64,000 nt of DNA from IMG/VR virus record IMGVR_UViG_3300045972_000138, positions 173,610 through 237,609 of that record; one strand, 5' to 3'. Numbering within the stretch: position 1 is the first letter of the stretch; every line of letters starts with the position of its first letter. Positions 3,934 to 56,729 of this stretch are shown here, piece after piece. Under the pieces are notes generated by a model. It searched no databases. It was not told the DNA's origin and saw nothing but the letters and a program-made list of their open reading frames with translations. The position numbers and the translations under genes are program-made.

Positions 3934-3977
3934 CTGGTACAGGTCGAACTCATACAATAAATAGATCTAAGGATTAT

Positions 3978-5266: not shown

Positions 5267-5274
5267 TAGTTTAT

Positions 5275-5356: not shown

Positions 5357-5363
5357 ATTTTAA

Positions 5364-5416: not shown

Positions 5417-5421
5417 GTTTA

Positions 5422-39570: not shown

Positions 39571-40454
39571 GATTTGGTGTTATAATTGCTTATCGCAACA
39601 AGGAGCAGCAAATGAAAAAGTTCTTTAAGTACACAGCAGAACACATTGGTCGTGAACGTGCAACCAAGTTTGTTAAGCTGCTGGAATCGGAAGACGTGGA
39701 TGTGATGCACGCAATGATGGACCCGGTCTTCGAAAACCAGTTCGTGTTGTTCGTGCAATGCACCGATGCTGAAGCGAAGGTTATCAAGAATCGTGTGTGG
39801 GAACTGAACAACGGTGCCTACAACGAGATGTTGGTCGTGGATGCAGACGAGATGGAGGAGTATCTGTAATGGCTAAGCTAAACGAAACGCAAGTAAACAA
39901 AGCATACGGGAAGCTGGAAACAGCTATGCTTGCACTGCAAGAGGAAGTGGTGGACTTCAAGCGTGCTTTCCCCATTGAGTCCAGTAAGCTGGCTCTCGAC
40001 GACGCTATGAGATCAGCGATGGGCGCACTCGAGGATGTGGACAGTGACATCACATCGCATTTTGCAACTCGTTAAGGATATCAAATGACTATCGTACGCA
40101 AAGGTGTTCGTGGAACTTGGGAAGCCGAAGACAGCATTGATCTTGTAGCACTGCGGGTGCTTAAGATCCACACGCATAAGGTAAGCACCGGGCAGCTTGT
40201 TACTACTGCCACAGTGCTTACAAAGGACAATGGTTTCCTATCGCATATGGTGTATCACGACTTCTCGCAACGTGTGATCGTGAGCAAAGATCGCTGCACC
40301 GAGGGCAATGTTACTGCACAGCACGCAGCGGCAATGGCCGGGATTAACCAGATCCACAGTGCCATCACTGCACACTATGTGAAGAAAGATGAAGTGGTGA
40401 CTGCCTAACAGGAATTTTAGTGTTATAATGTACACATCAACAAAGGAGTACACT

Positions 40455-40757
40455 ATGCAAAACACTAAACCCAAGGGCGTATGTCCCTGCTGCAATGGTT
40501 CGGGTCGTATGCCTGTACCAGAGTCATCGCAACGTTGGAAGACTGTCTGTGCCGGGTATGATGCTGCCACAGACACCTTCACTTGTCATAACTGCGGCGG
40601 CCAGTATATGTATGGTCAGGCAAAAGGGGAAGTTAGCCTCAACAAAGACGGCGAACCCTGCACACACGCCTACGAGGGCATTAACGCAGGTCGTTGCTGG
40701 ACCAAGTACACTTGCAAGCACTGCGGCGACAAGTATGACGTCGATTCTTCGGATTAA
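40455..40757 (+). CDS. zinc-finger protein
   Basis: CPCCNGSG, CHNCGG and CKHC; AGGAG SD. Confidence 0.7.
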   Translation: MQNTKPKGVCPCCNGSGRMPVPESSQRWKTVCAGYDAATDTFTCHNCGGQYMYGQAKGEVSLNKDGEPCTHAYEGINAGRCWTKYTCKHCGDKYDVDSSD

Positions 40758-41334: not shown

Positions 41335-41340
41335 GGAGCT

Positions 41341-41670
41341 ATGATGCGCCCTGTAATTGTGGCGGCCCTCGTGGCGGCCCTTACAGGGTGTGCCGTCCCT
41401 GTACCGAGGTTTGAGACGGCAGTAGGGTTAGTGCAGTGGCACAAAGTGAAAGACTTACAGGATATGCGCGTCATTTGCGATGATGTGCGATTCAAAATGC
41501 CGGGAATCACATACGGCTGCTATAAGATGGATAGCGAGAACAAGGTGTGCCACATCTACGCAATGGATAACGAACGATACTTCGGTACACTTGGGCACGA
41601 ACTCAAGCATTGTTTTGATGGCAGGTTCCACGATCAATTTGGAAATAGTGCGTATCCAATCGACAAATAG
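41341..41670 (+). CDS. small HExxH (zincin-like) lipoprotein
   Basis: LTGC lipobox; CHIYA...LGHELKHCFDGRFH; paralog of 57566..57895. Confidence 0.7.
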   Translation: MMRPVIVAALVAALTGCAVPVPRFETAVGLVQWHKVKDLQDMRVICDDVRFKMPGITYGCYKMDSENKVCHIYAMDNERYFGTLGHELKHCFDGRFHDQFGNSAYPIDK

Positions 41671-41710
41671 GATGTATAATACATACATCGCAACACACTA
41701 GGAGAAGCAG

Positions 41711-42121
41711 ATGGCTTATATGTCCCAAGAGAAGAAGGCACAGCTTGCACCCGCAATCAAGGCAGTGCTGAAGAAGTATGGTATGAAGGGCACTATCGGT
41801 GTTCGCAACCATAGCTCGCTTGTGTGCAATGTTACATCCGGCCCGTTGGATGTGATTGGCAATATGTTTGAACTGGCAAAGAGCAAGCCGGGCACGCATT
41901 ACAACCGCAACCCTGTGAAGCCTACGCACATTCAAGTGAACCCTCACTGGATCAGCGAGCACTACACGGGCAAGGTGTGCGAGTTCGTGCAAGATCTCAG
42001 AGACGCAATGGATGTTGGCAATCACGATCGCAGCGATATCCAGACAGACTATTTTGATGTGGGCTGGTACATTGATATCAACATCGGTCAGTGGAATAAG
42101 CCGTTTCAACTTACCGCCTAA
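41711..42121 (+). CDS. hypothetical protein (large-polyvalent-protein-domain-like, DYF motif)
   Basis: DRSDIQTDYFDVGWYIDINIG. Confidence 0.55.
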   Translation: MAYMSQEKKAQLAPAIKAVLKKYGMKGTIGVRNHSSLVCNVTSGPLDVIGNMFELAKSKPGTHYNRNPVKPTHIQVNPHWISEHYTGKVCEFVQDLRDAMDVGNHDRSDIQTDYFDVGWYIDINIGQWNKPFQLTA

Positions 42122-42195
42122 AGATCAAACAACCATCGACCAAAGTAGCATTTGGTCGTATAATTAATACTTCAGCAACACACTAGGAACACTTA

Positions 42196-43323: not shown

Positions 43324-43427
43324 TACTAAATAGACTGGGTATCACAAAATGCCCAGTTTGTTTTGTTTGATTTGACATTTGGTTAAATCAGTACTATAAT
43401 TCAAACACTTAAACAAAGGAGTCAGAA

Positions 43428-44861
43428 ATGATTAAACTATTATCAGTTCTAGCTGTTGCTACCGCGCTCACAGCGTGCGGTGGTGGCAGTGGTGGTCTCG
43501 ACGTTGCAGGTGCAAACCCTGCAACAACCGAAGCCACGATGTCGCCAATGGCGGCAATTACAAGTGCCAGTGCAGCAATGCAAGCATCTGTCACAACCGC
43601 AGGTGGGTTATCTAGCTTCGGTCAAAGTCCAGCAGCAGTTCGTACTCGTTACGGATTTGACGCACTTACTACCCCAGCCCAACAGGGTTCGGGCCAAACT
43701 ATCGTGATCATTAGTGCTTACGATAATCCTACAGCGGGTGCTGACTTAGCAGCATTCTCAGCAGCAAAAGGTATCGCAGGATGCCCTACTGTTGCAACGA
43801 CATTCGTTACACCAACGAACAGCTATCCTCAGGCAGTTGTACCAAAGCCAGTGATTGGCGATGGATGCACCTTCCAGAAGTTCAATGCAAACCCTAACGG
43901 TTTGGGTGCAAACCCAACTGCTATCCAGTACGATACGTCTGGTATGTGGATTGCAGAGAGCAACATGGATATCCAGTGGGCACACGCAATGGCTCCAATG
44001 GCAAAGATTGTATTGGTACAAGGGTCCAACAACTTCATCAGCTCACTTAGTGGTGCGGTTGCAGTTGCTAACCAATTTGCCGACGTAATCTCTATGTCGT
44101 GGGGTGGATACGAAAGCGCATTGAACCAAACCACAGCGTGTACGACAAACGAAATGGTGTTCATCCCAGGATGTACATTGTTTACGAAGACTCAGTACTC
44201 GTTGTTTGGTGCACCAAACACAACATACGGCACAGCAGGTGGATACGACACGAAAATGTTCTCCAATCCTAATGTGACATATGTTGCGGCATCGGGCGAT
44301 GCAGGATCTAAACCACTTTGGCCATCAGTGTCAACAAAGGTACTCGCAGTTGGTGGAACAAACAGCAGCGGTGCAACTGATACAGGTTGGACAGGCAGTG
44401 GTGGCGGTGTTTCTACATACTACACACGCCCAAGCTGGCAAACTGTTTCGGGTAATGCTCAACGCACTACACCCGACGTAGCAATGCCAGCAGACAGCGC
44501 AACCCCAATGAGTGTATACGTTAGCCCGCAAAAGGGTATGCCAGATACTGCTTGCGTAACAGCAAAAGGTGCGGCAGCTTGTGGCTGGTATGCAGGTTAC
44601 GGTACAAGTGTTAGCGCACCTATGTGGGCAGGACTTGCAGCGGTTACCAAAGCAGTTCGTACACAAAATGGAAAGCCAGTAGTAGACTTCATTGCATCAC
44701 TATACAACGTGGCGGCAGTACAAGGCAACTATGTTACAGCATTTGGGGACGTTACAACAGGAACAAACGGATTATACTCGTCGAAGGCCGGATATGATTT
44801 GGTTACAGGACTTGGTGTACCTAAAGCGAATGCACTAGTTGGAATGTTAGCAGCTCAATAA
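43428..44861 (+). CDS. S53 (sedolisin/kumamolisin) serine peptidase lipoprotein
   Basis: LTACGGGSG lipobox; E-x3-D (AESNMDIQW), AASGDAG, PDVA, GTSVSAPMWAG and YDLVTGLG. Confidence 0.88.
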   Translation: MIKLLSVLAVATALTACGGGSGGLDVAGANPATTEATMSPMAAITSASAAMQASVTTAGGLSSFGQSPAAVRTRYGFDALTTPAQQGSGQTIVIISAYDNPTAGADLAAFSAAKGIAGCPTVATTFVTPTNSYPQAVVPKPVIGDGCTFQKFNANPNGLGANPTAIQYDTSGMWIAESNMDIQWAHAMAPMAKIVLVQGSNNFISSLSGAVAVANQFADVISMSWGGYESALNQTTACTTNEMVFIPGCTLFTKTQYSLFGAPNTTYGTAGGYDTKMFSNPNVTYVAASGDAGSKPLWPSVSTKVLAVGGTNSSGATDTGWTGSGGGVSTYYTRPSWQTVSGNAQRTTPDVAMPADSATPMSVYVSPQKGMPDTACVTAKGAAACGWYAGYGTSVSAPMWAGLAAVTKAVRTQNGKPVVDFIASLYNVAAVQGNYVTAFGDVTTGTNGLYSSKAGYDLVTGLGVPKANALVGMLAAQ

Positions 44862-44880
44862 CTAAGATGAGCTTTAGGAG

Positions 44881-44902
44881 GCCCCGCAAGGGGCTTTCTT
44901 TT
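44881..44902 (+). terminator. intrinsic terminator
   Basis: GCCCC-GCAA-GGGGC followed by TTTCTTTT. Confidence 0.85.
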
Positions 44903-44981
44903 GGGCTATTCGTTTTTGAATACCTTGACACTCTAAATCTGATATGTTATACTTAGATCATAACTTATTAAGGAGCCACAG

Positions 44982-45227
44982 ATGGCATTCACAACTCTCA
45001 CCACAACCCAGAAGACATTCTTGGAATCTCACCTTCGTGGCACCGGCAAAGCATTGAGCTCTGCCCAGGCTCGCGAGACTTATGGCATTATGAACTTACG
45101 TGCTCGCATCTCTGAAATGCGTAGCGCAGGGCTTAATGTTCGCAAGGTTGTTAATACAAACGGTCGCAATGCATACACTATCGCTCGCCGCGATGTTGCA
45201 GGCGTACAAGGCAAGATCTTCGCATAA
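44982..45227 (+). CDS. helix-turn-helix protein
   Basis: LSSAQARETYGIMNLRARISEMRSAG. Confidence 0.7.
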   Translation: MAFTTLTTTQKTFLESHLRGTGKALSSAQARETYGIMNLRARISEMRSAGLNVRKVVNTNGRNAYTIARRDVAGVQGKIFA

Positions 45228-45252
45228 GCATTAGTCCTTTGTGTGTAAAGAA

Positions 45253-45631
45253 GCCACCTTAGGGTGGTTTTCTTTTGGTTGGATAAACAGGTTGCCCATT
45301 CATATCATATGTTGTATTATACATGTATTAACTACTTAAGGACTTGTATGAAAAATCTCTCTATTATCATTGCTTCGATGGTACTAGCATCAGCAGCGTT
45401 TGCAGCAGATTCTACCGCTACACAAACAATTGTGTTGGCAAAAGGGCTGACACTTACCTGCTCGAACGTCTCGTCTGTTTACGGTGTGGCCAATGGCGAT
45501 ACAACCGAGGCTCCTGCGGCAAAAGGTTCGCTGACTGTCAATTACAACGGCCGCCTCTATTTCTGCTCTACGGCTACGAAATAACCGATCTGCACATCCG
45601 CAAACCACCTTAGGGTGGTTTTCTTTTGGTT
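45253..45631 (+). repeat. duplicated terminator CCACCTTAGGGTGGTTTTCTTTTGGTT flanking 45348..45584
   Basis: Identical copies at about 45254-45280 and 45605-45631. Confidence 0.75.
45348..45584 (+). CDS. small secreted protein
   Basis: Signal peptide MKNLSIIIASMVLASAAFA; two Cys. Confidence 0.7.
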   Translation: MKNLSIIIASMVLASAAFAADSTATQTIVLAKGLTLTCSNVSSVYGVANGDTTEAPAAKGSLTVNYNGRLYFCSTATK

Positions 45632-45745
45632 AAAATATCTTTAAAAATCCGTAGACCTACAACTCTTCCTGCAGTATAATCAATACATGGGCAGCAGATA
45701 TAGCGGTCCAGAGTTAGTTTACTTTAATCAACTTTAGGAGTCTAT

Positions 45746-46204
45746 ATGACAAAAGGTATCCGCGCATTCGTTAACGACACGTTCAACAACACACTGTCCA
45801 AGCTGGGCGAACTGGGCAACATTGCCTTCCGTGCAGAAGTGATGAACCAGGCTATCATGGCCTTTGGTATCAACGTTGCATCCGCTGCAACGCATTACAA
45901 CCACAGCCTGAAGATGGCGCGTGCTGCAAACCCCGAAGCTGTTGCTACGCTGGGTCGTCCGGAAGACAAGAAGGGCGGACGCAAGCCCACGCTGGTGGAT
46001 GTGGTTAAGGCCAAGTCCGGCGAAGTGGTTGCAACTGGCGTCACCAAAGCTGCCGCTGAAGCAATGATTGCCAAAGCTGTTGCTGCCAAGAAGACCAAAC
46101 TGTCCATCAAGGTGGTGATCAACACCCCGGCCGAAGCTCCTGCAACCCCTGTGGAAGCTGCACTTGAATCCGGTGCACTGCACGCAGAAGCTGCATTGGC
46201 ATAA
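45746..46204 (+). CDS. ASAATHYN family putative DNA-binding protein
   Basis: MTKGIRAFVN...FRAEV...ASAATHYN...LGRPEDKKGGRKP. Confidence 0.75.
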   Translation: MTKGIRAFVNDTFNNTLSKLGELGNIAFRAEVMNQAIMAFGINVASAATHYNHSLKMARAANPEAVATLGRPEDKKGGRKPTLVDVVKAKSGEVVATGVTKAAAEAMIAKAVAAKKTKLSIKVVINTPAEAPATPVEAALESGALHAEAALA

Positions 46205-46634
46205 GCAGGGCCCGCAAGGGCCTTGTTTGCAGAGTGTTATAATGTAGCACTCTCCAAACAAGAAGGAGTTATCATGCCAGACTTTGATGATGTAGCCCTT
46301 GAAGATGCAATGTGTGCTGGATGTCAACCCGACAACGAATGGGAAGACGAAGATGATCAATGGGAAGACGATCTCACTATTGATTCCGGCGATCCTCTTG
46401 ACATCGAGTACGATCGTTAATTTTCCAAGATGGATTATTATTCCTAAGTAGGAATTTAAAATCCGAAACTTGGCCTGTCCTTTACACGTAACACGCATAT
46501 GACACTTACTACCCTCATCCTGCTCATTGCAGCGTGCGTCTTATTTTCAGAGGACCACCCTATACTTGGCATTTTGATGTTGTTCATCATCTTCCGATAG
46601 TATATAATATAAACATCAACAACAGGAGTTTACT

Positions 46635-47063
46635 ATGCTAATGAACGACGCACACACAGATTGGGACGTAGCTGACAACGATACACGTCCTGCCATTGCT
46701 ACACTGCACACAGGTGGCGGCGGATACTGGAGTAACATCAAACGTGATGTACACATTACTGAACTCACTGTTCCGTACATTAACGAAGAAGGCGACTTTG
46801 GTGAACTGCGTGTACATTTCAACACAGACAGCTGGCGCGTTGACAAAGTTGGATTGATATACACTGACAAGCAGTTTATGATAGAACTGCAAGCGTGGTT
46901 GTTGTCTATGGGACTTGCTGGATTAGATGTTGAATACAGCGAGCAAGGTATGCAGGGCGACAACTATGTTTCGTGCGATGTTGAAGCAGAATTCCTGAAA
47001 ACCTGGAAAGTAGCACATCCGGAAGCCTACAAGGCCGCATACGACAACATTTGGGCAGACTAA
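46635..47063 (+). CDS. hypothetical protein
   Basis: Own promoter cassette; YSEQGMQGDNYVS motif. Confidence 0.75.
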   Translation: MLMNDAHTDWDVADNDTRPAIATLHTGGGGYWSNIKRDVHITELTVPYINEEGDFGELRVHFNTDSWRVDKVGLIYTDKQFMIELQAWLLSMGLAGLDVEYSEQGMQGDNYVSCDVEAEFLKTWKVAHPEAYKAAYDNIWAD

Positions 47064-47231
47064 GCGACAGCGAGGAAGGGGCTTAGGCCCTTTTCGTTTG
47101 GTCATTTGAACCTCGGTGGCATAGATCAAGGCGCCGGTCGGACTAGAGCGAGGTTGCATAAAGATCAAACAAAACGGTTGCACACCAATCAATTCCTGTT
47201 ATAATAAACACATCGCAACAAGGAGCACATT

Positions 47232-47546
47232 ATGCTACTTCAACTCACTCCGTTCCCCATCAAGATGTTTGCACACAATCCAGAATCCAAGATGCTCGTT
47301 GTTGAATTGAGCGACTTTGGTTTGCCTGTTGGTATGTTGCCCTTTGGTCAGCTCTACGATGATGCGTGCGACGAAGGCTTTGCAATATATAACCATCGTA
47401 CTGGCAGCACAACCTTTTGGCACACTGCTGCCGATGTGCGCGATGCAGACGGCGACCTGACTACATGGATCCTGCAACCCACAACCGAGTCCTGCCGCAA
47501 GCATCCGGGCGTGCAGAACTACACGATGCACATACTCAACGACTAG
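47232..47546 (+). CDS. hypothetical protein
   Basis: Own promoter cassette; YDDACDEG motif. Confidence 0.7.
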   Translation: MLLQLTPFPIKMFAHNPESKMLVVELSDFGLPVGMLPFGQLYDDACDEGFAIYNHRTGSTTFWHTAADVRDADGDLTTWILQPTTESCRKHPGVQNYTMHILND

Positions 47547-48073
47547 GAGCACACCATGTTCGACATTATCCTTATTCGCTGGGGCTGGTACAAGTATCGC
47601 AAGGAGTTGGGTTATCCCATCGGCCTGCGTCGTGCTATGTTCTCGCAGATGCCACGATTCGGATCTTTTTACGAAGGCGAGGCGGGTTGCCCGGCATCTG
47701 ACAAACGTGATTACGTGTTAGTTCGCAAATACGAAACGGAGAATCCATAATGGCTTATCATCTTACTGGTCACGGAGCCTACAAGAAGGCAATTCAACGC
47801 AGCCTGCTACCTGTCGAGGGTGGATTGCATTATACGGCAAGCACAGACATCACCTCGGAGGACGCACTCGGATCGCCGGTCAACATACAGCGAGGCACAG
47901 GTTACAAGATAACTGGTACCAAAGACGGCAACGGCTACGTGGTGACCATCCTCGATGGATCCAAAGCAACCTATTACTTAGAGGCAGAAGAAGGTTGTAA
48001 ACTTTGCTAAAGTGGTTGCACAAACGGTTTCTGGTGTTATAATAAACACATCAGCAACACAATAGGAACTTAA

Positions 48074-48940
48074 ATGCCTACTCCACAACAGCAAATTATC
48101 GACAAGTGCAAGGAAGTGTACGAAACGGCTACACTCCTGTACGGTGTTGATATGTCCCGTGTAACCATTCACTTTGATCTTAAAGGTCACAATGCTGGAA
48201 TGGCATGCCGCCGCGGTGCCCAATACTACATGCGCTTCAACCGCGACATGCTTACACGTGATGCATTCGATCATGTGCTCAACAACACTGTGCCGCACGA
48301 AATTGCACACATTGTCTGCTTCATGAAACCCCAATATGGTCGCAATCACGACAGCGGCTGGGAGCGTGTTTGCCGTGCATTGGGCGGAACGGGCGCTCGC
48401 GCACATACCGAGGAAGTAGTGTATGGAAAAGGCACTACATATGAATATGTCACAAGCACTGGAAAGACTGTACGTGTTGGTGATCGTCATCACAAAGTTA
48501 TCCAAGCTGGCCGTTCACTTACTTGGAAACGTGGTTTGGGCACTGTTACAAACGCATGCCAATACAGCATTGTTGGTGTCCAAGGGCGCACACTTGCAAA
48601 CCCGCGTACTATTGTACCAACTGTACCTGCAGCCACTCCGGCATATGTTCCGGCATACCCATTTGGGGTTATTGGAACACAACTGCAACCAAAGGTACCG
48701 CACACAGTGGAAGTACCGAAACGTACACCACGCACTGTTGCCCCAACTGCCCCACACTTCCGCGAAGGTGCAAGCAAAGCAGCTATATCGCGTTCCATTA
48801 TGCTTGCAGGGCATACACGCGGTCAAACATATGAGCAAATCATTAGCGCAATGATGCTCGCGAATGGATATGATCGCCAACTTGCCCGTGCAACATACAA
48901 AGCAAACTTTGAAAAGGTTGGAGTGCCTGCTCCACAGTGA
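48074..48940 (+). CDS. SprT-like zinc metalloprotease
   Basis: FDLKGHNAG, TVPHEIAH and HDSGW. Confidence 0.85.
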   Translation: MPTPQQQIIDKCKEVYETATLLYGVDMSRVTIHFDLKGHNAGMACRRGAQYYMRFNRDMLTRDAFDHVLNNTVPHEIAHIVCFMKPQYGRNHDSGWERVCRALGGTGARAHTEEVVYGKGTTYEYVTSTGKTVRVGDRHHKVIQAGRSLTWKRGLGTVTNACQYSIVGVQGRTLANPRTIVPTVPAATPAYVPAYPFGVIGTQLQPKVPHTVEVPKRTPRTVAPTAPHFREGASKAAISRSIMLAGHTRGQTYEQIISAMMLANGYDRQLARATYKANFEKVGVPAPQ

Positions 48941-48952
48941 TAAATATGGGAT

Positions 48953-49486
48953 ATGAACTTAACTGAAATATCCCTACCCTCAACACAATACCTTACAGAA
49001 GCCTTCCGTAGCAATACAGAGGGCTTCTCTCTTGACGATCTTCTACTCATAGCACACACCTTCTTGTCTGAGGCAAAGAACAATAAGTCTCGCTCTGTGC
49101 CCATCGGCACCTTGAACAACGCTACCGAGGGCGTAGTCTTTGTAGAAGCATCCTGCTATGCATCTATGACTGCCCCTAAGATACAGCACTTGCCTAAGCT
49201 ACAAGCTAAAGTAGATGAGTTTAAAGCTAGTAAAAAGGCGAACAAAATGCAGCCATACGGTCCTAACGACAATGCGTTTGTGGGCGGTGGTCCTATCTCG
49301 AATATGATGCCGGGATTACGCCACGCGCACGTAACAAGGGACCTAAGCATTGTGTATGCCCTCTCGGGTGCCAATCCAACTGTCATTACATTGTACGGTA
49401 TCTTTAGCCACGCAGAGACAGGTACTGGAACACCGGGCAAACCCGATAGGCAGAAGAGTTTCGCAAAGTTTATAAAGAACCAATAA
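48953..49486 (+). CDS. RelE/YafQ-like RNase domain protein
   Basis: C-terminal GLRHAHVTRDLSIVY...LYGIFSHAE resembles YafQ; ATAAATA box at 48940. Confidence 0.5.
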   Translation: MNLTEISLPSTQYLTEAFRSNTEGFSLDDLLLIAHTFLSEAKNNKSRSVPIGTLNNATEGVVFVEASCYASMTAPKIQHLPKLQAKVDEFKASKKANKMQPYGPNDNAFVGGGPISNMMPGLRHAHVTRDLSIVYALSGANPTVITLYGIFSHAETGTGTPGKPDRQKSFAKFIKNQ

Positions 49487-49545
49487 ATCGGTTTACTTGC
49501 TTCGTGTTGATGCTATAATTAAAACATCAACAACAGGAGCTCTTA

Positions 49546-49854
49546 ATGCAAGCAAAGAAAGCAACACCACAACATTTTTCACTTAACACTGTAGCAGGCC
49601 GCGTTGCTTTGCTTACAGGCATTGTGGAGGGGGTTGTACTGCAAAAAGAAATTATGCACGCAGTAATTCAAGACACTGAAAAGCGCCCGTACCGCAAGCC
49701 TGTCGTTGCATACGGCAAACGTTACCCGAGTGTTACAGCAGCAGCATTGGCCAATTCGGGTGCAGTGGGGCGCAAAGCAGTAAACGCAATGCAGAAGAAC
49801 ATTGCACGCTGGTGCAACGAAGACTGCCACGTGGGCTTCTACTGGTCCGAATAA
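49546..49854 (+). CDS. hypothetical protein (NUMOD1-like segment)
   Basis: YGKRYPSVTAAA. Confidence 0.6.
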   Translation: MQAKKATPQHFSLNTVAGRVALLTGIVEGVVLQKEIMHAVIQDTEKRPYRKPVVAYGKRYPSVTAAALANSGAVGRKAVNAMQKNIARWCNEDCHVGFYWSE

Positions 49855-50907
49855 CATAAACGAAAAGGGGTTGACAGCCCCTTTTTTCTTTTGTATAATA
49901 CATTATGGCACAAATCACTATTATGGATCACGTTGTATTCCCCGATGGAAGTACCAACGAAGTCCATGCGACTATCACACACAGTGGTTGCAACATCGAA
50001 TACAGCGGGGCATTAACATCTGTCTCGTGGGAACAAATGGCAGATGTAGAGCAGCTTAGTGAGTTGTTTGGTTCACAGACTGTCCGCGTGTTTAAGGTTA
50101 TAGTACAGCTCTTGGGCAGGATCTACAGCGGCAAGGATGCATACAAACTTGTAGTCTGATTTGCGTGCCTAGATTTCAAGGTCAGATTTATGTTTCTAAA
50201 TCGGATTTTTAAACAAGGATCTGGCACAGGTTTCGTGCCTAAAGACTCAAAGGCACCTGAGCAGGCAGACCGAGGCACGTATACAATGGACAACCACACA
50301 CTAATCATTACACCGGAACAGAAGCGACTAATCATAAAAGCTCTGGAAAAGTTCTCGCAATTGCAGCTCGGGCAGACTAGTCTAGAGCAGCGAGAAGCAA
50401 AGAAGCTGGAGCAGTTGCTGGCACGTCATAAAGATAGTATAGTTGTAGACGCGGTAAATAGCGATACGCGCTAGTATATAATTAACTCTTGCCGGGTACG
50501 CAAGGGATCACTACAACCGCAACATTATACACCCACTGTATACGACGATACTGCTTTGAAGATAGCAGAGGGTCACTACGTTGTGGGGAGTAGCAGCAAA
50601 CTAATATGCGTAAGGATTTGGGTAAGACCCATTGGCTTCTATTAGCATTGCTTTTCTTATCTGGATATACTGTAACGCAATGCATCGCGTTGTCCCTATC
50701 CTAGATTTTCATCCTTGGATTTCATTTTCTGCTCTTAAATCAATTTCCCTGATTTAAGACGGTATCCTCGCTCCCAATTTTGAGAATGCACTTTGATTGA
50801 GCGAGGATTTCGCAGACTGCCCACCTCGGTATCGATCTGACCCAGTTGTCATTGAATCGAGCGAGGAGAGCACGCAGTAATAGGAGCATCGTTGCCCCTA
50901 TTATGCA

Positions 50908-51324
50908 TTAGACCCAGTAAAGCTTTGCCTTCTTTGCAGAAGCCGCCTTGCGGACCAGTGCAGTTGCAGCATCAAACGACAGCTTCTCGGCAACAAGTGC
51001 CCCAGTGCTCTTGACGAACACAGAGAACTCAGTTTGCTCAAGCACAACAGCCGCTTCGGGTGCAATGCGAATCTTGGGCTTGCGTCCGCCCTTCTTGTCT
51101 TCTGCACGCCCCAGACCTTCGAGGAGCGGTGCAAGTTCTGCAACCTTCTTAGCCTCTTTGAAAGCGTGATTGTAGTGGGTTGCAGCAGAGGCAAGCGTAA
51201 TGCCGTAGTCGTCCATTGCGAATGCAATAACTTCTGCACGGAAGCGCGTGTTGCCCAGTTCCGCACGCTGGGGAAGCAAGTCTACGAACTTGCGGTTAAC
51301 TGCGGGGCGAATTCCTTTGTCCAT
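50908..51324 (-). CDS. ASAATHYN family putative DNA-binding protein
   Basis: MDKGIRPAVN...FRAEV...LASAATHYN...GLGRAEDKKGGRKP. Confidence 0.75.
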   Translation of the reverse strand: MDKGIRPAVNRKFVDLLPQRAELGNTRFRAEVIAFAMDDYGITLASAATHYNHAFKEAKKVAELAPLLEGLGRAEDKKGGRKPKIRIAPEAAVVLEQTEFSVFVKSTGALVAEKLSFDAATALVRKAASAKKAKLYWV

Positions 51325-51495
51325 CTTAAACTCCTGTTGCGTTGTTGATGTATGTATTATGCATCCAAAGGAAGCTTCCGTCAACAACTATTTTCCACTT
51401 TACATATCTTTACAGAACATTAGTCTCGCTCTGTGCCCATCGGCGTCTTGATCGACTCGTCCGAGGCTAAATATTCCATCCAATGGAGATATATT

Positions 51496-52239
51496 ATGAC
51501 AAAGACCTACAATGTAGTTAAGAGTGCACCAGACGCAAGGGACTATCAGTTCTCGCAGAAGGTATCGATACCAAAGAGCGTGCCCAGCGCGGTGGACTTG
51601 CGTCCGCATATGCCTACCGTTGTTGATCAGGGTAACCTAGGCAGTTGCACCGCGAATGCTATTGTAGCAGCATTTCAATACGATCTTACCAAACAAAAAT
51701 TAAACATATTCACAGGATCCCGCCTGTTTGTGTACTATAATGAACGTGTAATGGAAGGAAGTGTAGGACAGGATAGCGGTGCAATGATTCGTGACGGGAT
51801 TAAGTCCCTTAACACGTATGGCGTATGCAGCGAGCCAACGTGGCCTTATATCATAGCTAAGTTCGCAGTTAAACCGTCTACAGCAGCTTACACGCAGGCA
51901 AAGCTAAACAGAGCACTAACCTATTACAGCGTTGCGAGCAATCCTACTGCAATCAAAACAGCACTTGCCGCGGGCTTCCCAGTAGTGATCGGCATCGAAG
52001 TCTACGAGAGCTTTGAAAGCGATGCTGTAGCAGTAAGCGGTGTTGTTCCTATGCCTGGTCCCTCGGAGCAGTTACTCGGTGGTCATGCAGTCCTAGTGGT
52101 AGGCTACAATGATGTATTAAAACAATTCATTGTACGCAATAGTTGGGGCACTGGTTGGGGCAAAAGCGGATACTTCTTCTTGCCTTATGCATACACATCG
52201 CTAATGAGCGATTGCTGGGTAGTCTCCTCGGTGAACTAG
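51496..52239 (+). CDS. C1A papain-family cysteine peptidase
   Basis: DQGNLGSCTANA, GGHAVLVVGY and RNSWG catalytic motifs; GGAG SD. Confidence 0.92.
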   Translation: MTKTYNVVKSAPDARDYQFSQKVSIPKSVPSAVDLRPHMPTVVDQGNLGSCTANAIVAAFQYDLTKQKLNIFTGSRLFVYYNERVMEGSVGQDSGAMIRDGIKSLNTYGVCSEPTWPYIIAKFAVKPSTAAYTQAKLNRALTYYSVASNPTAIKTALAAGFPVVIGIEVYESFESDAVAVSGVVPMPGPSEQLLGGHAVLVVGYNDVLKQFIVRNSWGTGWGKSGYFFLPYAYTSLMSDCWVVSSVN

Positions 52240-52865
52240 ATCAAGACGCCGGGCGCCCTATAGCGAGGTCTATGTTGTTGCGAAAAAACAACTAGACCTT
52301 TTTCTTTGACCTGTTATAATTGATACATCAACAACAGGAGAACTATATGGCAACAGCACTTCAAGCATCAGTAGTTTCTAAACTCAACAAGCGCCAACAA
52401 ACCTCACTCCGCACCCTTCAGAACAAGGTAGAGAGCGGCCGAGGCTACGTATCTACCATTGCTGTAAGCGACGCACAAATGCGTGCATTGCAAGCAGCGT
52501 TTGATGCAGCGAAAGCCTCGGGGCACACTCTGCCACCCGAAGTTGCAATTGCTGCGGCTAAGTTGGGATTGAAATAAAATGGTAGCACAGCTTGGAAGCT
52601 GTGCTATAATAAAGCATCACAACAGGAGTTTACTATGCTCACAGCTCAAGAAACAAATAAGCTACGTCTTATTAAAGATATGGCTACCCGTGGTTTGGCG
52701 AATCAAGTATCGCGTGAAGACAAACAATGGGTTCTGGACATAGCAGCACGGGAAGGATCCTCAGTCCCCGCCCCTGCAGCAGCGATGGCGTTGCGTGAGG
52801 GTTACAACATTAGCCATCTCACAAACATCAGCAAGCAAACGGTTGCAGTATAACAGGAGTATATC

Positions 52866-53069
52866 ATGGCATTTGATGTAATTCAACTGTGCCGCAACGC
52901 CGGCAATGATTTGAAAGCTGACCTCGGTGGTGCGCCACTTGAAGACAGTATGGCATACGAGGTTGCAGGCTGCTTGCTGGATGATGCCGATATCCTCAAG
53001 GCTGCTAAGGCCAAGTGGCCGGGCAAGTCCCGCCAGATCCTGCAAGAGATCATGGCAGACTACATTTAA
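52866..53069 (+). CDS. hypothetical protein
   Basis: AGGAG SD. Confidence 0.65.
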   Translation: MAFDVIQLCRNAGNDLKADLGGAPLEDSMAYEVAGCLLDDADILKAAKAKWPGKSRQILQEIMADYI

Positions 53070-53372
53070 AGATAGACAGTGTGTTTCTTTGTGTTATAAT
53101 TGATATATCAACAACAGGAGCGCACACTATGCAAATTAATGGAAACAAAATTATTTACGCCACCCATGTTGTGGTGTGCGACCCCTCGTGTGCCAGCCCA
53201 GAGTACATGAAGATTATGGCAGAGCTTCTTGAGGATGCAAATGCACCTACTATGCGTGAACACGCACGGACTCTGCGCTATCACAATAATGATGGCACGT
53301 GGGGGATTAAACAGCACAAAGGCTATCAACCCTGTGCTATAATGTCTGCATAGCAACACAAAGGAGCACACT

Positions 53373-53711
53373 ATGCAAACAGTTCACGCTTACATCCGCT
53401 TAACCCACAAATACCGTGATGGTTGGAGTCACTTGGACAGTGACGAGTTTTTGACATCAGTACGCCTCACTCCGCCTAAGATGGTTCGCGAAGGCGAAGG
53501 GTACGACGACGGTGGCAAGTATGTGCAGTACCTGCGTGTTCCCCGTAATGTTAATCCTGGGCAGCTTGGACAAGCGTTGCGCGATACTATCGGGGGCAGC
53601 GACTGCCGACACGAGCACGACTGCTGCGGCTGCGCTACACGTTATGTTCGCACTAAGCTAGTTGCACCACGCAAGCTCAAAGTAACGACAAGCGTTACCT
53701 ACAACTATTAA
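53373..53711 (+). CDS. hypothetical protein
   Basis: CRHEHDCCGC motif; own promoter cassette. Confidence 0.7.
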   Translation: MQTVHAYIRLTHKYRDGWSHLDSDEFLTSVRLTPPKMVREGEGYDDGGKYVQYLRVPRNVNPGQLGQALRDTIGGSDCRHEHDCCGCATRYVRTKLVAPRKLKVTTSVTYNY

Positions 53712-54333
53712 GTTAGTTGCTACTAACAGGGGACTTCGGTCCCTTTTGTTTTGGCCGCTGTGTTCGTGCTCTATGCGATCAAGGTAGCACTGCTTAAGAG
53801 CGAGGATCGCCACAATCGGTATATAGATCAACAGAGTCTCGCTAAGGTACAGATACTGGGCTTAGGTCTATACCTAAGGTGCGAGGTCGGCCTAGACTTC
53901 TAAGCCTGATTTAGATTTTTAAAAATCAGAGTTAAACTCAGAAATCTAATTCTCGCACCTAAACAAGAATCTTAAACAAGAACCCTGCCTATAGGCCACG
54001 ATGCTTGCTAAGGACTACACGCAGGTTATTGTACAGAACTAGTGGCACAAAATAGCCTAAAAAGCGTATTAAAACACGCCTACAAGCTTTAGTAGAGCAC
54101 TGGGCAATACTTTAACACGACAGCACGTAATCAATGTGTTGCCTGTTCGTTACTCTCGCTAACGATTGCAAAAGAACCGGTAACAGCAGCAGCAGTCGTA
54201 CCGAGGTTGTGGCCTATAAGATTAGAACCTTAGATCGTTTAGACAAAGTCTCGCTCTGTGCCCATCGGCGTCTTGATCGACTCGTCCGAGGCTACAGATG
54301 ACTACATCTTAGACAGGTGATTGCAGCGGAGAC

Positions 54334-54434
54334 AAAAAAAGAGCGGCTTAGACTTAACTAAGACCGCCCTAACGTGGAGGAGAACCACGACTATGCAACA
54401 ACAAGACTCACACTAACAAAAACTATCTAGCTTG
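54334..54434 (-). ncRNA. candidate ~100-nt sRNA with an anti-SD loop
   Basis: TGTGTTATAAT promoter (TATAAT at 54445-54440), CGTGG-TTCTCCT-CCACG hairpin, terminator hairpin plus T7; no SD-led ORF on this strand. Confidence 0.6.
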
Positions 54435-54618
54435 ATGTAATTATAACACACTAACCTTACATCAAACTTACATATTCCTTACACCAAACTTACAGGTTTT
54501 CTCGCTGCAGGATTTAATACCTGCGCTTGCATTTGCGAGAGAAAACCTCACACTGCACGCAAATAACCGATAACCTCGCTGCGAGAACTTCGGTATACTG
54601 CGTGCTATCCGAGAGTGC

Positions 54619-54837
54619 CTAGTAATTAATTAAGCTTGGCACTTCATAGAACTTGCCGATTGTGATCAATGCAGAACGCACGGGTTCTGGGCTGCTTTGA
54701 TCGGCTAAGTTTAATATTTCATTACGCAGATACTTCTCGATGCTGTGCTCAAACAAGTCATAGATTTGATCTGAGGACAACTTATTGCACGCAAGCGCAA
54801 ACGCTTTTAAGTTGCTAAATTGTTTTACAGTGTGCAT
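54619..54837 (-). CDS. hypothetical protein
   Basis: AAGGAG SD and a TATAAT promoter. Confidence 0.7.
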   Translation of the reverse strand: MHTVKQFSNLKAFALACNKLSSDQIYDLFEHSIEKYLRNEILNLADQSSPEPVRSALITIGKFYEVPSLINY

Positions 54838-54889
54838 AGTGTAACTCCTTTGTGTAATGTATTATAACACAATTTGGAAGTTTTTGCTA

Positions 54890-55084
54890 TTAAAGTTCAA
54901 CTGTTTTGTTGGACTCTTCGACCGCACTAACAATCATTGCTCCCTTGAAGAAGCCTCCCGAGGAGATATCAAACGTTACGTCGCCGATACCATCAGTGAA
55001 GTGTTTGAGGAGGATGCGTTCAATCTCCTCAGTGCTGATTTCTATTACCTTCGTTACTTTTACAGAGGTGCGTTGTGTTGCCAT
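54890..55084 (-). CDS. hypothetical protein
   Basis: AGGAG SD and a promoter. Confidence 0.65.
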   Translation of the reverse strand: MATQRTSVKVTKVIEISTEEIERILLKHFTDGIGDVTFDISSGGFFKGAMIVSAVEESNKTVEL

Positions 55085-55701
55085 TTGTATTCTCCTGTTG
55101 TATGTCTATATTATAACACAGCAGATGGAAACTTCTCAAGTGCTGCACGCAATACTTCTGGTTGCGGGCCATGAGGTGTACCGTGGAAGTAAGCAAGAGT
55201 GTGACTCATTGCGGCAGCAAGACATTGCCACTCTTGCAGCGTAAAGTGCGCGTAAGCAATTTGTGTCTTCTGCAATTCAGTAAGTTCGAGCATCTCGTGT
55301 ACTCCTTAAGTAGACTTCTTTGCTTTGGGCTCGGGGAAATAAAACAGCTTAGTCTTGCCTGCAAGCCCGTGTTGCAGTGCGTAGCGCAAGCACACAGCTT
55401 TAGTGCCTATGCAATAAGCATACACACCGTCGTTGCTTATAAGTGTCCAGTCGTACATGTTAACTCCTTATGTACGTTTATTATAGCAGATTTTCTAAGT
55501 TAAAGTTCCATCTTTACATATCTTTACAAAGCAGCAATCGTGCTTTTAGCTTTGAGTTCTGCGATCTTAGGTAGCGAGGTAAGTCATCTTAGGAATCTAA
55601 AATCTAAGATAGATCCTCACACGACATGCTCAAGACGCCGACCTGTGCTGACCGAGATTGTTTGTTGACAACAGCAAGTAAATGTGCTATAAAATAACAC
55701 T

Positions 55702-55908
55702 ATGCAAACCTACCGATACACTCTGAAGGACCTGAGCACAGGTAACGAGGAGATTAGAGAGTTCACCGGATACGACAACGAAGTCTTCTCGGTTGACTCT
55801 ATCGCCTGCAAGAAGGTTAAAGACGAGGCCGCACGCTCTCTTATAGCGTACTGGAACTACTCACACAAAGGTAAGCGGAGTTACACCCTACTCTCGCCGG
55901 GGCACTAG
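55702..55908 (+). CDS. hypothetical protein
   Basis: TTGACA promoter upstream. Confidence 0.6.
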   Translation: MQTYRYTLKDLSTGNEEIREFTGYDNEVFSVDSIACKKVKDEAARSLIAYWNYSHKGKRSYTLLSPGH

Positions 55909-56729
55909 AGATTCTGCGAAGTACATAGGCAAGGCAGCAAGCAGCGATGATGCAGCAGCCTCGAGCACAAATGTCTTTGGTATCATAAATGCATACGCGA
56001 TAACAAACGCTATCGCCTGAACTACCAGGAAGACGGTAAACAAATAACGAGGATGCATTTTACTTGCTCTCGATGTTTGTCTGAGCGATCTCCCAAACCA
56101 TCTGCACGAAACGTTTGAAAGACATTGGCTTACCGCCGATGCAGTAAGTGCGTGTAACGTGTTGCAGGTAAGCGTAGTTGGCTGATGCGGGCATAGTGTG
56201 CTCCTTGTTGCGATAAAACAATTATAGCATAGAAACATTCCAATGCAACTCACTTTACATATCTTTACACAGCACAGGACCGTGCTCTACGTGATCAAGG
56301 CCAGCGACTTGACCTACCGAGGTTCTAAGTCGCTCGCGTCTTAGGTTTTTGTAACCTTTGATATCTGCAGCGCGACAGCCTCGGTGGAGGTTTTACTGCT
56401 GCGAAAAACCCCTGCGAGGTATAAAAACATACGGCCAGCCTCCTACGTGCAAACATTATAACATAGGACCTCGCTCTACAAGTAAATTCTTTAAGTAGAA
56501 TTTAATACCTTAGCGAGAACAAGTATTACCTCGCTGGTACACACTCAAGCCAGCGAGCAAGCATAGCGCGATACATACGCACTGTATAAAACAGCAGTAG
56601 TAACATTCTCGCAAAACCCATTTGTTCCCCTACACATATAGCACGGCAAATCAATTGTAAAGATATGTAAAGCAGCACACTTTCACCCAAAGAAGCGTTA
56701 TAATAAACACATAGCAACAAAGGACTAAC

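What the first reader, a model, noticed from the sequence alone, without database searches (positions are those of the whole stretch)
54334..54494. Candidate trans-acting sRNA displaying an anti-Shine-Dalgarno loop complementary to the phage's own early start sites
Seen on the minus strand: an extended -10 TGTGTTATAAT with the usual ACATCAA start; no SD or ORF; TCTTGTTGTTGCATAGT followed by the hairpin CGTGG-[TTCTCCT]-CCACG; then a terminator hairpin and T7, about 100 nt in total. The loop is complementary to AGGAG(AA), and the flank is complementary to ACTATGCAA. The sequence AGGAG-N3-5-ACTATGC(AA) is the start region of genes at 40455, 46635, 52635, 53129, 53373 and 54837(-). Inference: one RNA could shut off translation of many early (and host) mRNAs, acting as an early-to-late switch controlled by the TGTAAG array.
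Basis: partly seen in the sequence, partly recalled or inferred. Interest (0 to 1): 0.75.

Follow-up and report, generated by a model that had tools for sequence, protein, structure and literature searches.

The report
Phage small RNA against start sites
A roughly 100-base non-coding RNA gene with its own promoter and terminator lies in a pond jumbo phage and two relatives; its conserved stretches are complementary to the ribosome-binding and start regions of the phage's own early genes, so it probably damps their translation, but no expression data exist.

Summary
On the minus strand there are four TGTAAG repeats at 11-bp spacing, a consensus extended -10, about 100 nt with no credible ORF, a small hairpin with a CUCCU loop, and a strong terminator with U7. 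It is the only such promoter-to-terminator unit in the 237-kb phage contig. Neighbour-gene searches found two diverged relatives (L235, L237; flanking proteins 70-84% identical). In both, the stretch from repeat array to terminator is a conservation island between poorly conserved flanks. The -10, two 14-nt single-stranded blocks and the terminator are kept. The hairpin is the least conserved part, though an accessible CUCC persists. Predicted pairing to the phage's promoter-leader-start cassettes (CAACAA-AGGAG-N3-5-ACTATGC) is far stronger than for shuffled RNAs. The best register is a long colinear antisense through the two conserved blocks, not only the proposed seed plus loop. The plus-strand micro-ORF is formally kept, but it looks like a by-product of two tandem start-region copies. 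No RNA data could be found, so expression, the real targets and the early-to-late switch role remain untested. Verdict: a probable new phage sRNA of a known mechanistic kind, confined to a narrow lineage.

The parts
54456..54494 (-). Array of four TGTAAG direct repeats at 11-bp spacing. The last repeat ends 10 bp upstream of the -10 hexamer, in place of a -35. Presumed binding site of an unknown regulator.
   Evidence: unique in the genome. Conserved with 4 copies in L237 and 2 copies in L235, a 22-bp indel. Similar arrays with promoters occur in L240, L241 and L244.
54440..54450 (-). Extended -10 promoter TGTGTTATAAT.
   Evidence: Five other exact copies in the window are all on the sense strand of downstream sequence; four were seen to be followed by an SD and ATG. 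L237 has TGTGTTATAAT and L235 has TGTGTTACAAT.
54334..54434 (-). Predicted sRNA transcript of about 100 nt (the TSS is inferred, not mapped).
   Evidence: Fold. It is the only orphan promoter-terminator unit in the genome. Homologs are L235:1481-1588 and L237:4742-4846.
54411..54424 (-). Conserved block 1, AGUUUUUGUUAGUG. It is U-rich and mostly single-stranded. It is predicted to pair with CACUAUGCAAA at start codons, and could also be a chaperone site.
   Evidence: 14/14 invariant in three phages. Pairing register. P(unpaired) 0.44-0.68.
54389..54402 (-). Conserved block 2, GUUGUUGCAUAGUC.
   Evidence: 14/14 invariant. The 9-bp seed duplex is -10.2 kcal/mol with an opening cost of 1.1. Alternative register.
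54373..54389 (-). Small hairpin CGUGG[UUCUCCU]CCACG carrying the CUCCU (anti-SD) loop.
   Evidence: -3.5 kcal/mol; CUCC P(unpaired) = 1.0. In L235 and L237 the stem is CAGG/CCUG with a longer loop and CUCC is kept. This is the least conserved segment.
54334..54370 (-). Intrinsic terminator: 12-bp bulged stem plus U7. It also ends the upstream minus-strand operon.
   Evidence: It is more stable on this strand in the window (-17.0 versus -13.1) and in L235. L235 shows a G.U to G-C change. No other minus-strand terminator lies between 54619 and 54450.
54393..54416 (+). Plus-strand micro-ORF MQQQDSH* behind GGAGGAG. Judged a by-product of two tandem start-region-like copies.
   Evidence: L235 and L237 read MQQLTH*. 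SD-ATG spacing is 10-12 nt. No plus-strand promoter-like site lies between 53745 and 54390.
54619..54837 (-). Upstream 72-aa gene. Its transcripts (promoters at 54861-54871 and 55110-55120) run into the same terminator, so the sRNA also lies in this operon's 3' UTR.
   Evidence: Homologs P0002-P0004 are 81-84% identical.
53116..53134 (+). Predicted target start region AGGAGCGCACACTATGCAA of the 74-aa gene. It ranks first or second genome-wide.
53362..53378 (+). Predicted target start region AGGAGCACACTATGCAA of the 112-aa gene.
40444..40460 (+). Predicted target start region AGGAGTACACTATGCAA of the 100-aa gene.
46624..46638 (+). Predicted target start region AGGAGTTTACTATGC.
   Evidence: rank 10.
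52624..52638 (+). Predicted target start region AGGAGTTTACTATGC.
   Evidence: rank 17.
54834..54849 (-). Predicted target start region AGGAGTTACACTATGC of the 72-aa gene in the sRNA's own operon.
   Evidence: rank 28.
56191..56205 (-). Predicted target start region AGGAGCACACTATGC.
   Evidence: rank 12.

Best explanation
This is an independent, sigma-70-type small RNA gene of an uncultured freshwater jumbo phage.

Shown from sequence and comparison: host RNA polymerase would start at the extended -10 promoter, which has no -35. The four TGTAAG repeats sit where a -35 would be. Transcription would stop about 100 nt later at a strong intrinsic terminator.

Inferred: the RNA is not translated. 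Its 5' two-thirds are largely single-stranded and read as an imperfect antisense copy of the phage's recurring promoter-leader-start cassette. GUUGUUG faces the leader CAACAAC, GUCUU or the CUCC loop faces the Shine-Dalgarno AGGAG, and CAUAGU or UUAGUG faces the ACUAUG start. The gene probably arose from inverted copies of such a start region.

Inferred: by pairing in trans across the ribosome-binding site and start codon of a set of small early genes, and perhaps of genes in its own operon, it would block 30S binding and lower their translation. The TGTAAG array would let an unknown DNA-binding protein set when or how much RNA is made.
For: Unit anatomy. It is unique in the genome, and Rfam gives no match.

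Conservation:
- Syntenic homologs were found without bias, through the neighbouring 72-aa protein.
- The stretch from array to terminator is a conservation island with poorly conserved flanks.
- The -10, two invariant 14-nt blocks and the terminator are kept, with a G.U to G-C change on the sense strand. Third-codon positions of the adjacent genes are invariant at only 0.58-0.62.
- The hairpin stem differs by two double changes, G-C to A-U and U-A to G-C.
- An accessible CUCC is present in all three.
- No conserved sense ORF exists.

Complementarity:
- AGGAG-N3-6-ACTATGC occurs at 7 sites, all gene starts within a 16-kb span.
- By cofold, interaction with cassette start regions averages -17.8 kcal/mol, against -7.4 +/- 1.8 for 24 shuffles.
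- Start regions in the 38-57.5 kb early region (n = 38) average -13.8, against -7.45 +/- 1.5 for shuffles, and 11 of the top 20 targets come from this region.
- In the accessibility-corrected ranking the cassette genes rank 2-36 of 278, and early versus rest gives p = 5e-6.
- An explicit 29-bp duplex covers -27 to +6 of gene 53129.

Other:
- GGAG-N3-7-ACTATG occurs 12 times in this genome, against 4, 0 and 2 in three large relatives that lack the sRNA.
- 17 of 21 extended -10 promoters of the 237-kb contig lie in this 64-kb window, which fits a host-polymerase early region.
Against: - No transcript evidence: no RNA runs were listed.
- Only three homologs exist, in effect two lineages. None was found in about 1 Mb of other relatives' loci or in three 210-363-kb relatives.
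- The anti-SD hairpin is weak (-1 to -4 kcal/mol) and is the least conserved segment.
- For L235 and L237, pairing to start sites in their own contigs is not significantly better than for shuffles.
- The complementarity could simply reflect descent from inverted start-region copies.
- Relatives without the unit in the available contigs (L240, L241, L246) still have ACTATGC starts.
- The sRNA promoter is of the same class as its targets' promoters, so a temporal switch is not evident.
- My start-site set comes from a crude ORF/SD heuristic that covers 58% of the genome.
Confidence: 0.42

Rival explanations
1. The sRNA is real, but its main target is something else: a host mRNA, a phage gene in the missing ~38% of the genome, or one specific gene such as the 64-aa first gene of its own operon. 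On this view the broad match to many early start sites is a by-product of its origin from a start-region copy.
For: - The invariant blocks are 14 nt long, but no site in the available 237 kb matches more than 10-11 nt of either.
- The 64-aa gene's start region is the top predicted target in both L235 and L237, at -14.2 and -14.4, and scores -12.8 in the window.
- The contig is only 62% complete, and the host is unknown.
Against: Early-region start sites as a class are strongly enriched among predicted targets. No candidate single target with a long perfect match is available.
Confidence: 0.25
2. This is a DNA-level junction element. The TGTAAG array, the promoter and the terminator would act as a protein-bound insulator or terminator between convergent operons, or as part of a replication or recombination site in the large non-coding region. 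The short RNA would be a by-product with no trans function.
For: - The unit sits where minus-strand and plus-strand transcription converge, and it also terminates the upstream operon.
- The array, together with a palindrome, persists in L240 and L241 without the sRNA body. In L240 the -10 is decayed.
- The unit adjoins a ~590-bp ORF-free conserved region and a strain-level mosaic junction at 54247-54276.
Against: The two invariant blocks lie inside the transcribed part. They are neither needed for termination nor similar to the array. The -10 is kept in all three sRNA-bearing phages.
Confidence: 0.15
3. The promoter and terminator form a leader or attenuator that controls read-through into the downstream ~590-nt non-coding region (53746-54333), which would be the functional RNA.
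For: The downstream region is ORF-free, 77% identical to L235 over 425 nt, and rich in conserved hairpins. Distant relatives have minus-strand promoters that read into comparable regions.
Against: The terminator is strong (-17 to -20 kcal/mol, with U7) and no alternative antiterminator pairing was evident. The first ~100 nt after the terminator are poorly conserved.
Confidence: 0.08
4. The plus strand is the functional one: a start region (GGAGGAG, a hairpin, then ATG) with a 6-7-codon micro-ORF that acts as a translated leader peptide or as a decoy for ribosomes or a repressor.
For: - The ORF is open in all three phages, MQQQDSH and MQQLTH twice.
- A 3-nt indel keeps the frame, and the same TAA stop is used.
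- One synonymous ACG/ACT difference separates L235 and L237.
- GGAG motifs are conserved upstream.
Against: - No plus-strand promoter-like site lies in the 640 nt upstream, and a terminator at 53728-53745 follows the preceding gene.
- SD-ATG spacing is 10-12 nt.
- The peptide's middle is not conserved.
- Nucleotide invariance extends beyond the ORF on both sides.
- The conserved -10 and the U7 tract are oriented for the minus strand.
Confidence: 0.07

Closest known systems
c4 antisense RNA of phages P1 and P7 (Rfam C4)
   Same: It is a phage-encoded RNA of similar size (my own knowledge: about 77 nt). It acts in trans by pairing short complementary stretches, displayed in loops, to the ribosome-binding region of a phage mRNA and so blocks translation (review PMC12197685).
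   Different: From my own knowledge: c4 is processed from the same transcript as its single target (icd/ant) and serves immunity in temperate phages. Here the RNA has its own promoter and terminator, sits in a large apparently lytic-type phage, and matches a family of start sites. There is no sequence or Rfam match.
Lambda OOP RNA and P22 sar RNA
   Same: They are short phage RNAs (OOP 77 nt, sar 68/69 nt) that base-pair with a phage mRNA and reduce its expression; OOP has its own promoter, pO (PMC12197685). That each also ends at an intrinsic terminator is my own knowledge.
   Different: OOP is listed as a cis antisense RNA in the review; that sar is also cis-encoded and fully complementary to an overlapping gene is my own knowledge, since the review's table lists it as trans. 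Here no gene overlaps on the other strand apart from a 7-codon frame, and pairing to targets is partial and in trans.
C/U-rich anti-Shine-Dalgarno sRNAs of bacteria (for example Staphylococcus RNAIII and RsaE, Bacillus RoxS); recalled from my own knowledge
   Same: An accessible pyrimidine-rich motif (here CUCC/CUCCU) in a hairpin loop or single strand could pair with the GGAG of several mRNAs.
   Different: Those are host-encoded and their motif is the most conserved part. Here the loop region is the least conserved segment, and the invariant blocks are the anti-leader and anti-start sequences.
T4 RegB endoribonuclease and RegA translational repressor (functional analogues; my own knowledge)
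   Same: They are phage-encoded shut-off of many early mRNAs through recognition of the GGAG/start region.
   Different: They are proteins, not an RNA. No homology is implied or tested.
PhoB/OmpR-type response-regulator promoters ('pho box' architecture); my own knowledge, only a resemblance for the TGTAAG array
   Same: Direct repeats with 11-bp phasing that come in pairs (the 22-bp indel between L235 and the others). They replace the -35, and the last repeat ends about 10 bp upstream of the -10.
   Different: The repeat sequence TGTAAG is not the enterobacterial TGTCA core. The host is unknown. No winged-helix regulator gene was found in the phage contig. The array could equally be a repressor operator.

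Membership tests
Stand-alone bacterial-type sRNA gene (promoter to intrinsic terminator, non-coding) | Own promoter matching the organism's consensus | tested here: met
   TGTGTTATAAT is identical to five other exact copies in the window; four were seen to drive an SD and ATG. The -10 is conserved in L235 and L237.
Stand-alone bacterial-type sRNA gene (promoter to intrinsic terminator, non-coding) | Intrinsic terminator about 50-300 nt downstream | tested here: met
   The hairpin is -17 to -20 kcal/mol and is followed by U7 in all three homologs.
Stand-alone bacterial-type sRNA gene (promoter to intrinsic terminator, non-coding) | No conserved ORF on the transcribed strand | tested here: met
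   Sense frames are short, lack an SD, and are broken by indels between homologs.
Stand-alone bacterial-type sRNA gene (promoter to intrinsic terminator, non-coding) | The transcript is actually made | not testable with these tools
   No RNA run was listed. Only three pond-metagenome DNA runs hold the sequence.
Trans-acting base-pairing translational repressor | An accessible conserved region complementary to the RBS and start codon of targets | tested here: met
   Blocks 1 and 2 are invariant and about 0.5-0.7 unpaired. Predicted duplexes cover the SD and AUG. Enrichment over shuffles is shown.
Trans-acting base-pairing translational repressor | Target expression responds to the RNA, and compensatory mutations restore regulation | not testable with these tools
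   This needs reporter assays.
Trans-acting base-pairing translational repressor | sRNA-target complementarity is maintained in relatives | tested here: inconclusive
   The seed and the ACTATGC starts are both kept in L235 and L237. Overall pairing there is only 1.3-1.5 sd better than shuffles.
Cis-encoded antisense RNA (OOP/sar type) | An overlapping gene on the opposite strand | tested here: not met
   Only a 7-codon frame lies opposite, and the surrounding region 53746-54618 is ORF-free.
Rfam C4 or any other curated RNA family | A covariance-model match | tested here: not met
   cmscan of 50-60 kb at E <= 1 gave only a chance-level P9 hit elsewhere.
Hfq-type sRNA | A U-rich site next to a stem plus a terminator poly-U tail; chaperone binding | tested here: inconclusive
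   The U-rich block AGUUUUUG and the U7 tail are present. Binding cannot be tested and the host is unknown.
PhoB/OmpR-box promoter | Binding by a winged-helix response regulator | not testable with these tools
   The geometry resembles this type. No PF00486 gene was found in the phage and the host is unknown.

The most novel reading that the evidence does not exclude
A jumbo phage builds a multi-target 'anti-start-site' RNA from inverted copies of its own promoter-leader-start cassette. It uses this RNA, under control of a repeat-binding regulator, to lower translation of a whole class of early genes at once. This would be an RNA counterpart of T4 RegB/RegA and, to my knowledge, the first trans-acting sRNA regulon directed at a lytic phage's own early mRNAs.
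Probability: 0.3. Interest if true: 0.75.

Novelty: new variant of a known kind. Interest (0 to 1): 0.55.

Why it matters
Post-transcriptional control by phage-encoded small RNAs is known mainly from temperate phages, as single-target cis or near-cis antisense RNAs, or from prophage sRNAs that act on the host. A conserved stand-alone sRNA in an uncultured jumbo phage whose invariant parts mirror the shared start region of its own early genes would point to RNA-based bulk regulation of an early gene class. It would also show how such a regulator can arise, by inverted duplication of the target's start region. In addition, it marks a regulated promoter type (TGTAAG repeats) and a large structured non-coding region as features of this phage group. 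All of this is prediction: the phage is uncultured and no transcriptome is available.

Tried and rejected
- **Cultured relatives.** Near-identity and protein searches against phage records found no close relative. Only the DNA ligase gave distant matches.
- **Rfam.** No family matched.
- **RNA evidence.** No RNA runs were listed. Three DNA runs only showed identical sequence and a strain junction.
- **Exact and degenerate DNA patterns** in IMG/VR and JGI metagenomes:
  - The sRNA core gave no hit.
  - One hit, L247, is a GC-rich chance match.
  - The TGTAAG-array pattern gave more than 118 unrelated loci with no sRNA.
- **Distant relatives via the 112-aa, 268-aa and 200-aa proteins**: no similar DNA and no analogous orphan promoter-terminator unit in 876 kb.
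- **An apparent similarity in L002** (TATAAT-ATCAAG...GTTCTCCACC) did not hold up. It has no hairpin, no terminator and a fold z-score of +1.2.
- **Closer relatives via the 112-aa and 64-aa proteins** (L240-L261): the unit is absent.
- **Covariance model R1.** It found only its three training sequences, and it did not realign the window's hairpin, so no formal pair counts are given.
- **Plain RNAduplex ranking** was uninformative because it gives long bulged duplexes. It was replaced by cofold and an accessibility-corrected scheme.
The cofold shuffle control stands instead.
- **Phage-encoded regulators.** No sigma-70 or winged-helix gene was found in this contig.
- **Neighbouring small proteins.** Pfam gave nothing.

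Full report
**Context.** The window is the last 64 kb of a 237,609-bp IMG/VR viral contig (CheckV 62% complete, GC 40.7%). No cultured phage is close. Protein-level relatives are uncultured jumbo phages with 300-400-kb contigs from freshwater and pond samples. The window is packed with small genes. Each sits behind a stereotyped cassette: an extended -10 (TGTG[T/C]TATAAT), about 6 nt, CAT(C/A)..CAACA(A), AGGAG, 3-5 nt, then often ACTATG. Of the 21 such promoters in the contig, 17 lie in this window. That fits a host-polymerase 'early' region, though the label is an inference.

**Observation.**
- four TGTAAG repeats at exact 11-bp spacing (54456-54494);
- TGTGTTATAAT (54440-54450);
- ACATCAA;
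- TCTTGTTGTTGCATAGT;
- the hairpin CGTGG[TTCTCCT]CCACG;
- a bulged 12-bp terminator stem with T7 ending at 54334.

The 101-nt RNA folds to -26.4 kcal/mol (z = -2.75), and its centroid structure is the small hairpin plus the terminator. The array is unique in the genome. A scan for 'extended -10 or consensus promoter, then under 170 nt, then a strong terminator, with no SD-led ORF' found this unit plus one weak hit, which I judged to lie in coding sequence, in 237 kb. AGGAG-N3-6-ACTATGC occurs seven times in the genome. The surrounding 53746-54618 is ORF-free. No minus-strand terminator separates the upstream 72-aa gene from the unit, so the sRNA also lies in the 3' UTR of that operon.

**Comparative evidence.** Searches that presupposed the RNA sequence found nothing. 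An unbiased route worked better. Homologs of the upstream 72-aa protein (81-84% identity) lie on two usable contigs, L235 and L237. Both have the same gene order: 64 aa, 72 aa, a gap of about 900 nt, then the convergent 112-aa gene.

Alignment shows a conservation island running exactly from the repeat array to the end of the terminator. It has 14-17 invariant columns per 20. The 3' UTR before it and the sequence after it have 0-9 invariant columns per 20 and many gaps.

What is kept:
- the -10 (TGTGTTATAAT or TGTGTTACAAT);
- two 14-nt blocks that are 14/14 invariant, AGTTTTTGTTAGTG (54411-54424) and GTTGTTGCATAGTC (54389-54402);
- the terminator, which shows a G.U to G-C change and is more stable on the sRNA strand in two of the three phages.

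For comparison, third-codon positions of the two adjacent genes are invariant at only 0.58-0.62. The array has 4 copies in L237 and 2 in L235, a 22-bp difference.

The first ~15 transcribed nt, including ACATCAA, vary. The hairpin is the least conserved segment:
- window: C-GUGG[UUCUCCU]CCAC-G;
- L237: CAGG[UUGUCUCCACU]CCUG;
- L235: CAGG-U-UGUG[CUC]CACA-CU-CCUG.

Read from the closing C-G pair inward, two stem pairs differ by double changes (G-C to A-U, and U-A to G-C). This supports a hairpin, but it rests on what are in effect two lineages. The hairpin is also weak, at -1 to -4 kcal/mol. A CUCC with P(unpaired) of 0.8-1.0 is present in all three.

The unit is absent from all other relatives examined:
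- 876 kb of distant loci;
- contigs with the 112-aa protein at 73-91% identity or the 64-aa protein at 67-81% identity;
- covariance-model searches of about 1 Mb of loci and three records of 210-363 kb.

The family is therefore narrow.

**What the RNA could pair with.** I built a crude set of 278 start regions.

With RNAcofold partition functions:
- The seven ACTATGC cassette starts average -17.8 kcal/mol, against -7.4 +/- 1.8 for 24 composition-matched shuffles of the RNA body.
- The 38 start regions between 38 and 57.5 kb average -13.8, against -7.45 +/- 1.5.
- Eleven of the top 20 targets come from these 38 (Mann-Whitney p = 6e-7).

With an accessibility-corrected scheme (duplex suboptimals plus opening energies):
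- The picture is the same: gene 53129 ranks 2 and the cassette genes rank 2-36 of 278.
- Early versus rest gives p = 5e-6.

The favoured register is a nearly continuous duplex between sRNA nt ~16-46 and about -27 to +6 of the mRNA. GUUGUUG (block 2) pairs with the leader CAACAAC. GUCUU pairs with AGGA of the SD. UUGUUAGUG (block 1) pairs with CACUAUGCAA across the start codon. The small hairpin stays closed.

- the 9-bp seed UUGCAUAGU/ACUAUGCAA gives -10.2 kcal/mol;
- the loop-SD pairing gives -5.3 to -8.2 kcal/mol;
- opening costs are about 0-5 kcal/mol.

A second target type (AGGAGAAC...AUGGCAACA, for example 52347 and the 64-aa gene) matches the loop (GUUCUCCU) together with GUUGUUGC. The cofold runs cannot represent loop kissing, and the duplex-based scheme allows only one continuous duplex, so the two-site mode is under-scored.

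In L235 and L237, pairing with the start sites on their own short contigs is only 1.3-1.5 sd better than shuffles, so the replicate evidence is weak. GGAG-N3-7-ACTATG is more frequent in this genome (12 sites) than in three large relatives without the sRNA (4, 0 and 2). This is a weak co-occurrence signal that phylogeny alone could explain.

**Origin and the micro-ORF.** Read on the plus strand, the locus looks like two tandem start-region copies. The first is intact: GGAG...GACTATG. In L235, GGAGCACA[ACCTGA]CTATGC equals the cassette sequence plus a 6-nt insert that creates the stem. The second is degenerate: CAACAAGACTCACACTAACAAAAAC, compared with the cassette CAACAAGGAGCACACTATGCAAAAC. The 6-7-codon frame (MQQQDSH, or MQQLTH in both relatives) starts at the ATG of the first copy and stops at the TAA that replaces the ATG of the second.

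The frame does survive, with a 3-nt indel and one synonymous difference. Against a coding role:
- its middle is not conserved;
- SD-ATG spacing is 10-12 nt;
- no plus-strand promoter-like site lies in the 640 nt upstream, and a terminator follows the preceding gene;
- invariance extends beyond the frame on both sides.

I therefore treat the micro-ORF as a by-product (probability that it is the function: about 0.07).

**Regulation.** The TGTAAG repeats replace the -35. They are phased at 11 bp, vary in copy number by pairs, and the last one ends 10 bp from the -10. This geometry is typical of response-regulator or similar direct-repeat binders (my own knowledge), but an operator for a repressor is equally possible. 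No winged-helix or sigma gene was detected in the contig.

Related arrays (TGTAAG twice, preceded by a perfect palindrome GTTAGTAAG..CTTACTAAC) sit in L241 and L244 before an extended -10 that points antisense into a convergent small gene. In L240 the same arrangement has a decayed -10. The array is therefore a wider regulatory element of this phage group and is not tied to the sRNA. Nothing here shows an early-to-late switch. The sRNA promoter belongs to the same class as its putative targets' promoters.

**Verdict.**
- I put the probability that a discrete minus-strand RNA is made at about 0.75. This rests on the promoter, the terminator, the conservation island and the absence of an ORF.
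- I put the probability that it acts as a trans antisense repressor of the phage's own early start regions at about 0.4.
- The rivals are another main target (0.25), a DNA-level junction element (0.15), an attenuator for the downstream non-coding region (0.08) and the plus-strand micro-ORF (0.07).
- The closest described system is the c4 RNA of P1/P7, which has loop-displayed complementarity to an RBS (PMC12197685). OOP and sar are cis antisense RNAs and differ in that defining feature. Anti-SD C/U-rich sRNAs and T4 RegB/RegA are mechanistic or functional analogues (my own knowledge).
- No Rfam family matches. I rate it a new variant of a known kind, of moderate-to-good interest, limited by the absence of any expression data and by having only three homologs.

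Noticed in passing
window 53746-54333 (both strands); L235:1782-2200; L237:~4850-5480: A ~590-bp ORF-free region lies next to the sRNA terminator. It is 77% identical to L235 over 425 nt. It is built of hairpins closed by GCGAG/CUCGC or CCUCG/CGAGG stems, plus a conserved AT-rich hairpin CTGATTT...AAATCAG. Its function is unknown: it could be an ncRNA, an origin or a protein-binding array.
   Followed up: partly
L002:5185-6370; L003:4660-5760; L237:~450-3690: Distant relatives carry 1.1-3-kb ORF-free regions after the same gene cluster. These share the motif vocabulary (TCTCGC, CCGAGG, CTAAGATG), long direct and inverted repeats, and orphan sigma-70-type promoters (TTGACA-N17-TATAAT on the minus strand). 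This suggests a conserved non-coding 'hub' in this phage group.
   Followed up: partly
L241:~5100-5180 (-), L244:~1720-1790 (-), L240:~5160-5230 (-): TGTAAG direct repeats preceded by a perfect palindrome GTTAGTAAG-N2-3-CTTACTAAC occur at an extended -10 promoter. That promoter points antisense into the 3' end of convergent small genes that the gene caller missed. In L240 the -10 is decayed to TACGCT.
   Followed up: partly
window 54247-54276: In the Logan assembly of run X1, the dominant strain (depth ~17) is identical to the window from 54265 rightwards, but its contigs break here and the left flank differs. Run X3 has a contig that spans the junction identically. This is a strain-level mosaic junction just beyond the sRNA terminator.
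   Followed up: no
window 38400-56500, both strands: A family of near-identical promoter-leader-start cassettes (TGTG[T/C]TATAAT, ~6 nt, CATCAACAA, AGGAG, N3-5, ACTATG) sits in front of unrelated small ORFan genes. 17 of the contig's 21 extended -10 promoters lie in this window. The cassettes resemble mobile regulatory cassettes that could drive gene shuffling.
   Followed up: partly
L259:1184-1250; L260:765-830: A different tiny unit follows the 66-aa gene. A TTGCTATAAT promoter is followed by about 45 nt holding the hairpin GCGUAGCAUAUGCUACGC, a U-run and an 8-codon frame. It is not homologous to the sRNA.
   Followed up: no
window 54497-54620 (-): The 3' UTR of the 72-aa gene contains a partly conserved long hairpin (GGUUUUCUCUCGC...GCGAGAAAACC, with an inner CGCAGG/CCUGCAG stem) directly upstream of the TGTAAG array and without a U-tract.
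   Followed up: no
window 53373-53711 (+): The 112-aa protein with a Cys/His cluster (CRHEHDCCGC) has no Pfam match. It has more than 90 relatives in IMG/VR and consistently borders the large non-coding region.
   Followed up: partly
L240:418-1098: A close relative (its 112-aa protein is 91% identical) encodes a 226-aa sigma-70-family protein about 3 kb upstream. No Sigma70_r2 match was found in the window's own 237-kb contig.
   Followed up: partly
window 1729-5496 (+): There are four tRNA genes (Arg-TCT, Met-CAT, Leu-TAA, Thr-TGT). An ATP-dependent DNA ligase lies at 8500-9918.
   Followed up: no
window 53147-53204 (+): A weak Rfam hit to Pseudomonas sRNA P9 (22 bits against a gathering score of 43, E = 0.35) lies inside the 74-aa gene. 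I judge it a chance match.
   Followed up: no
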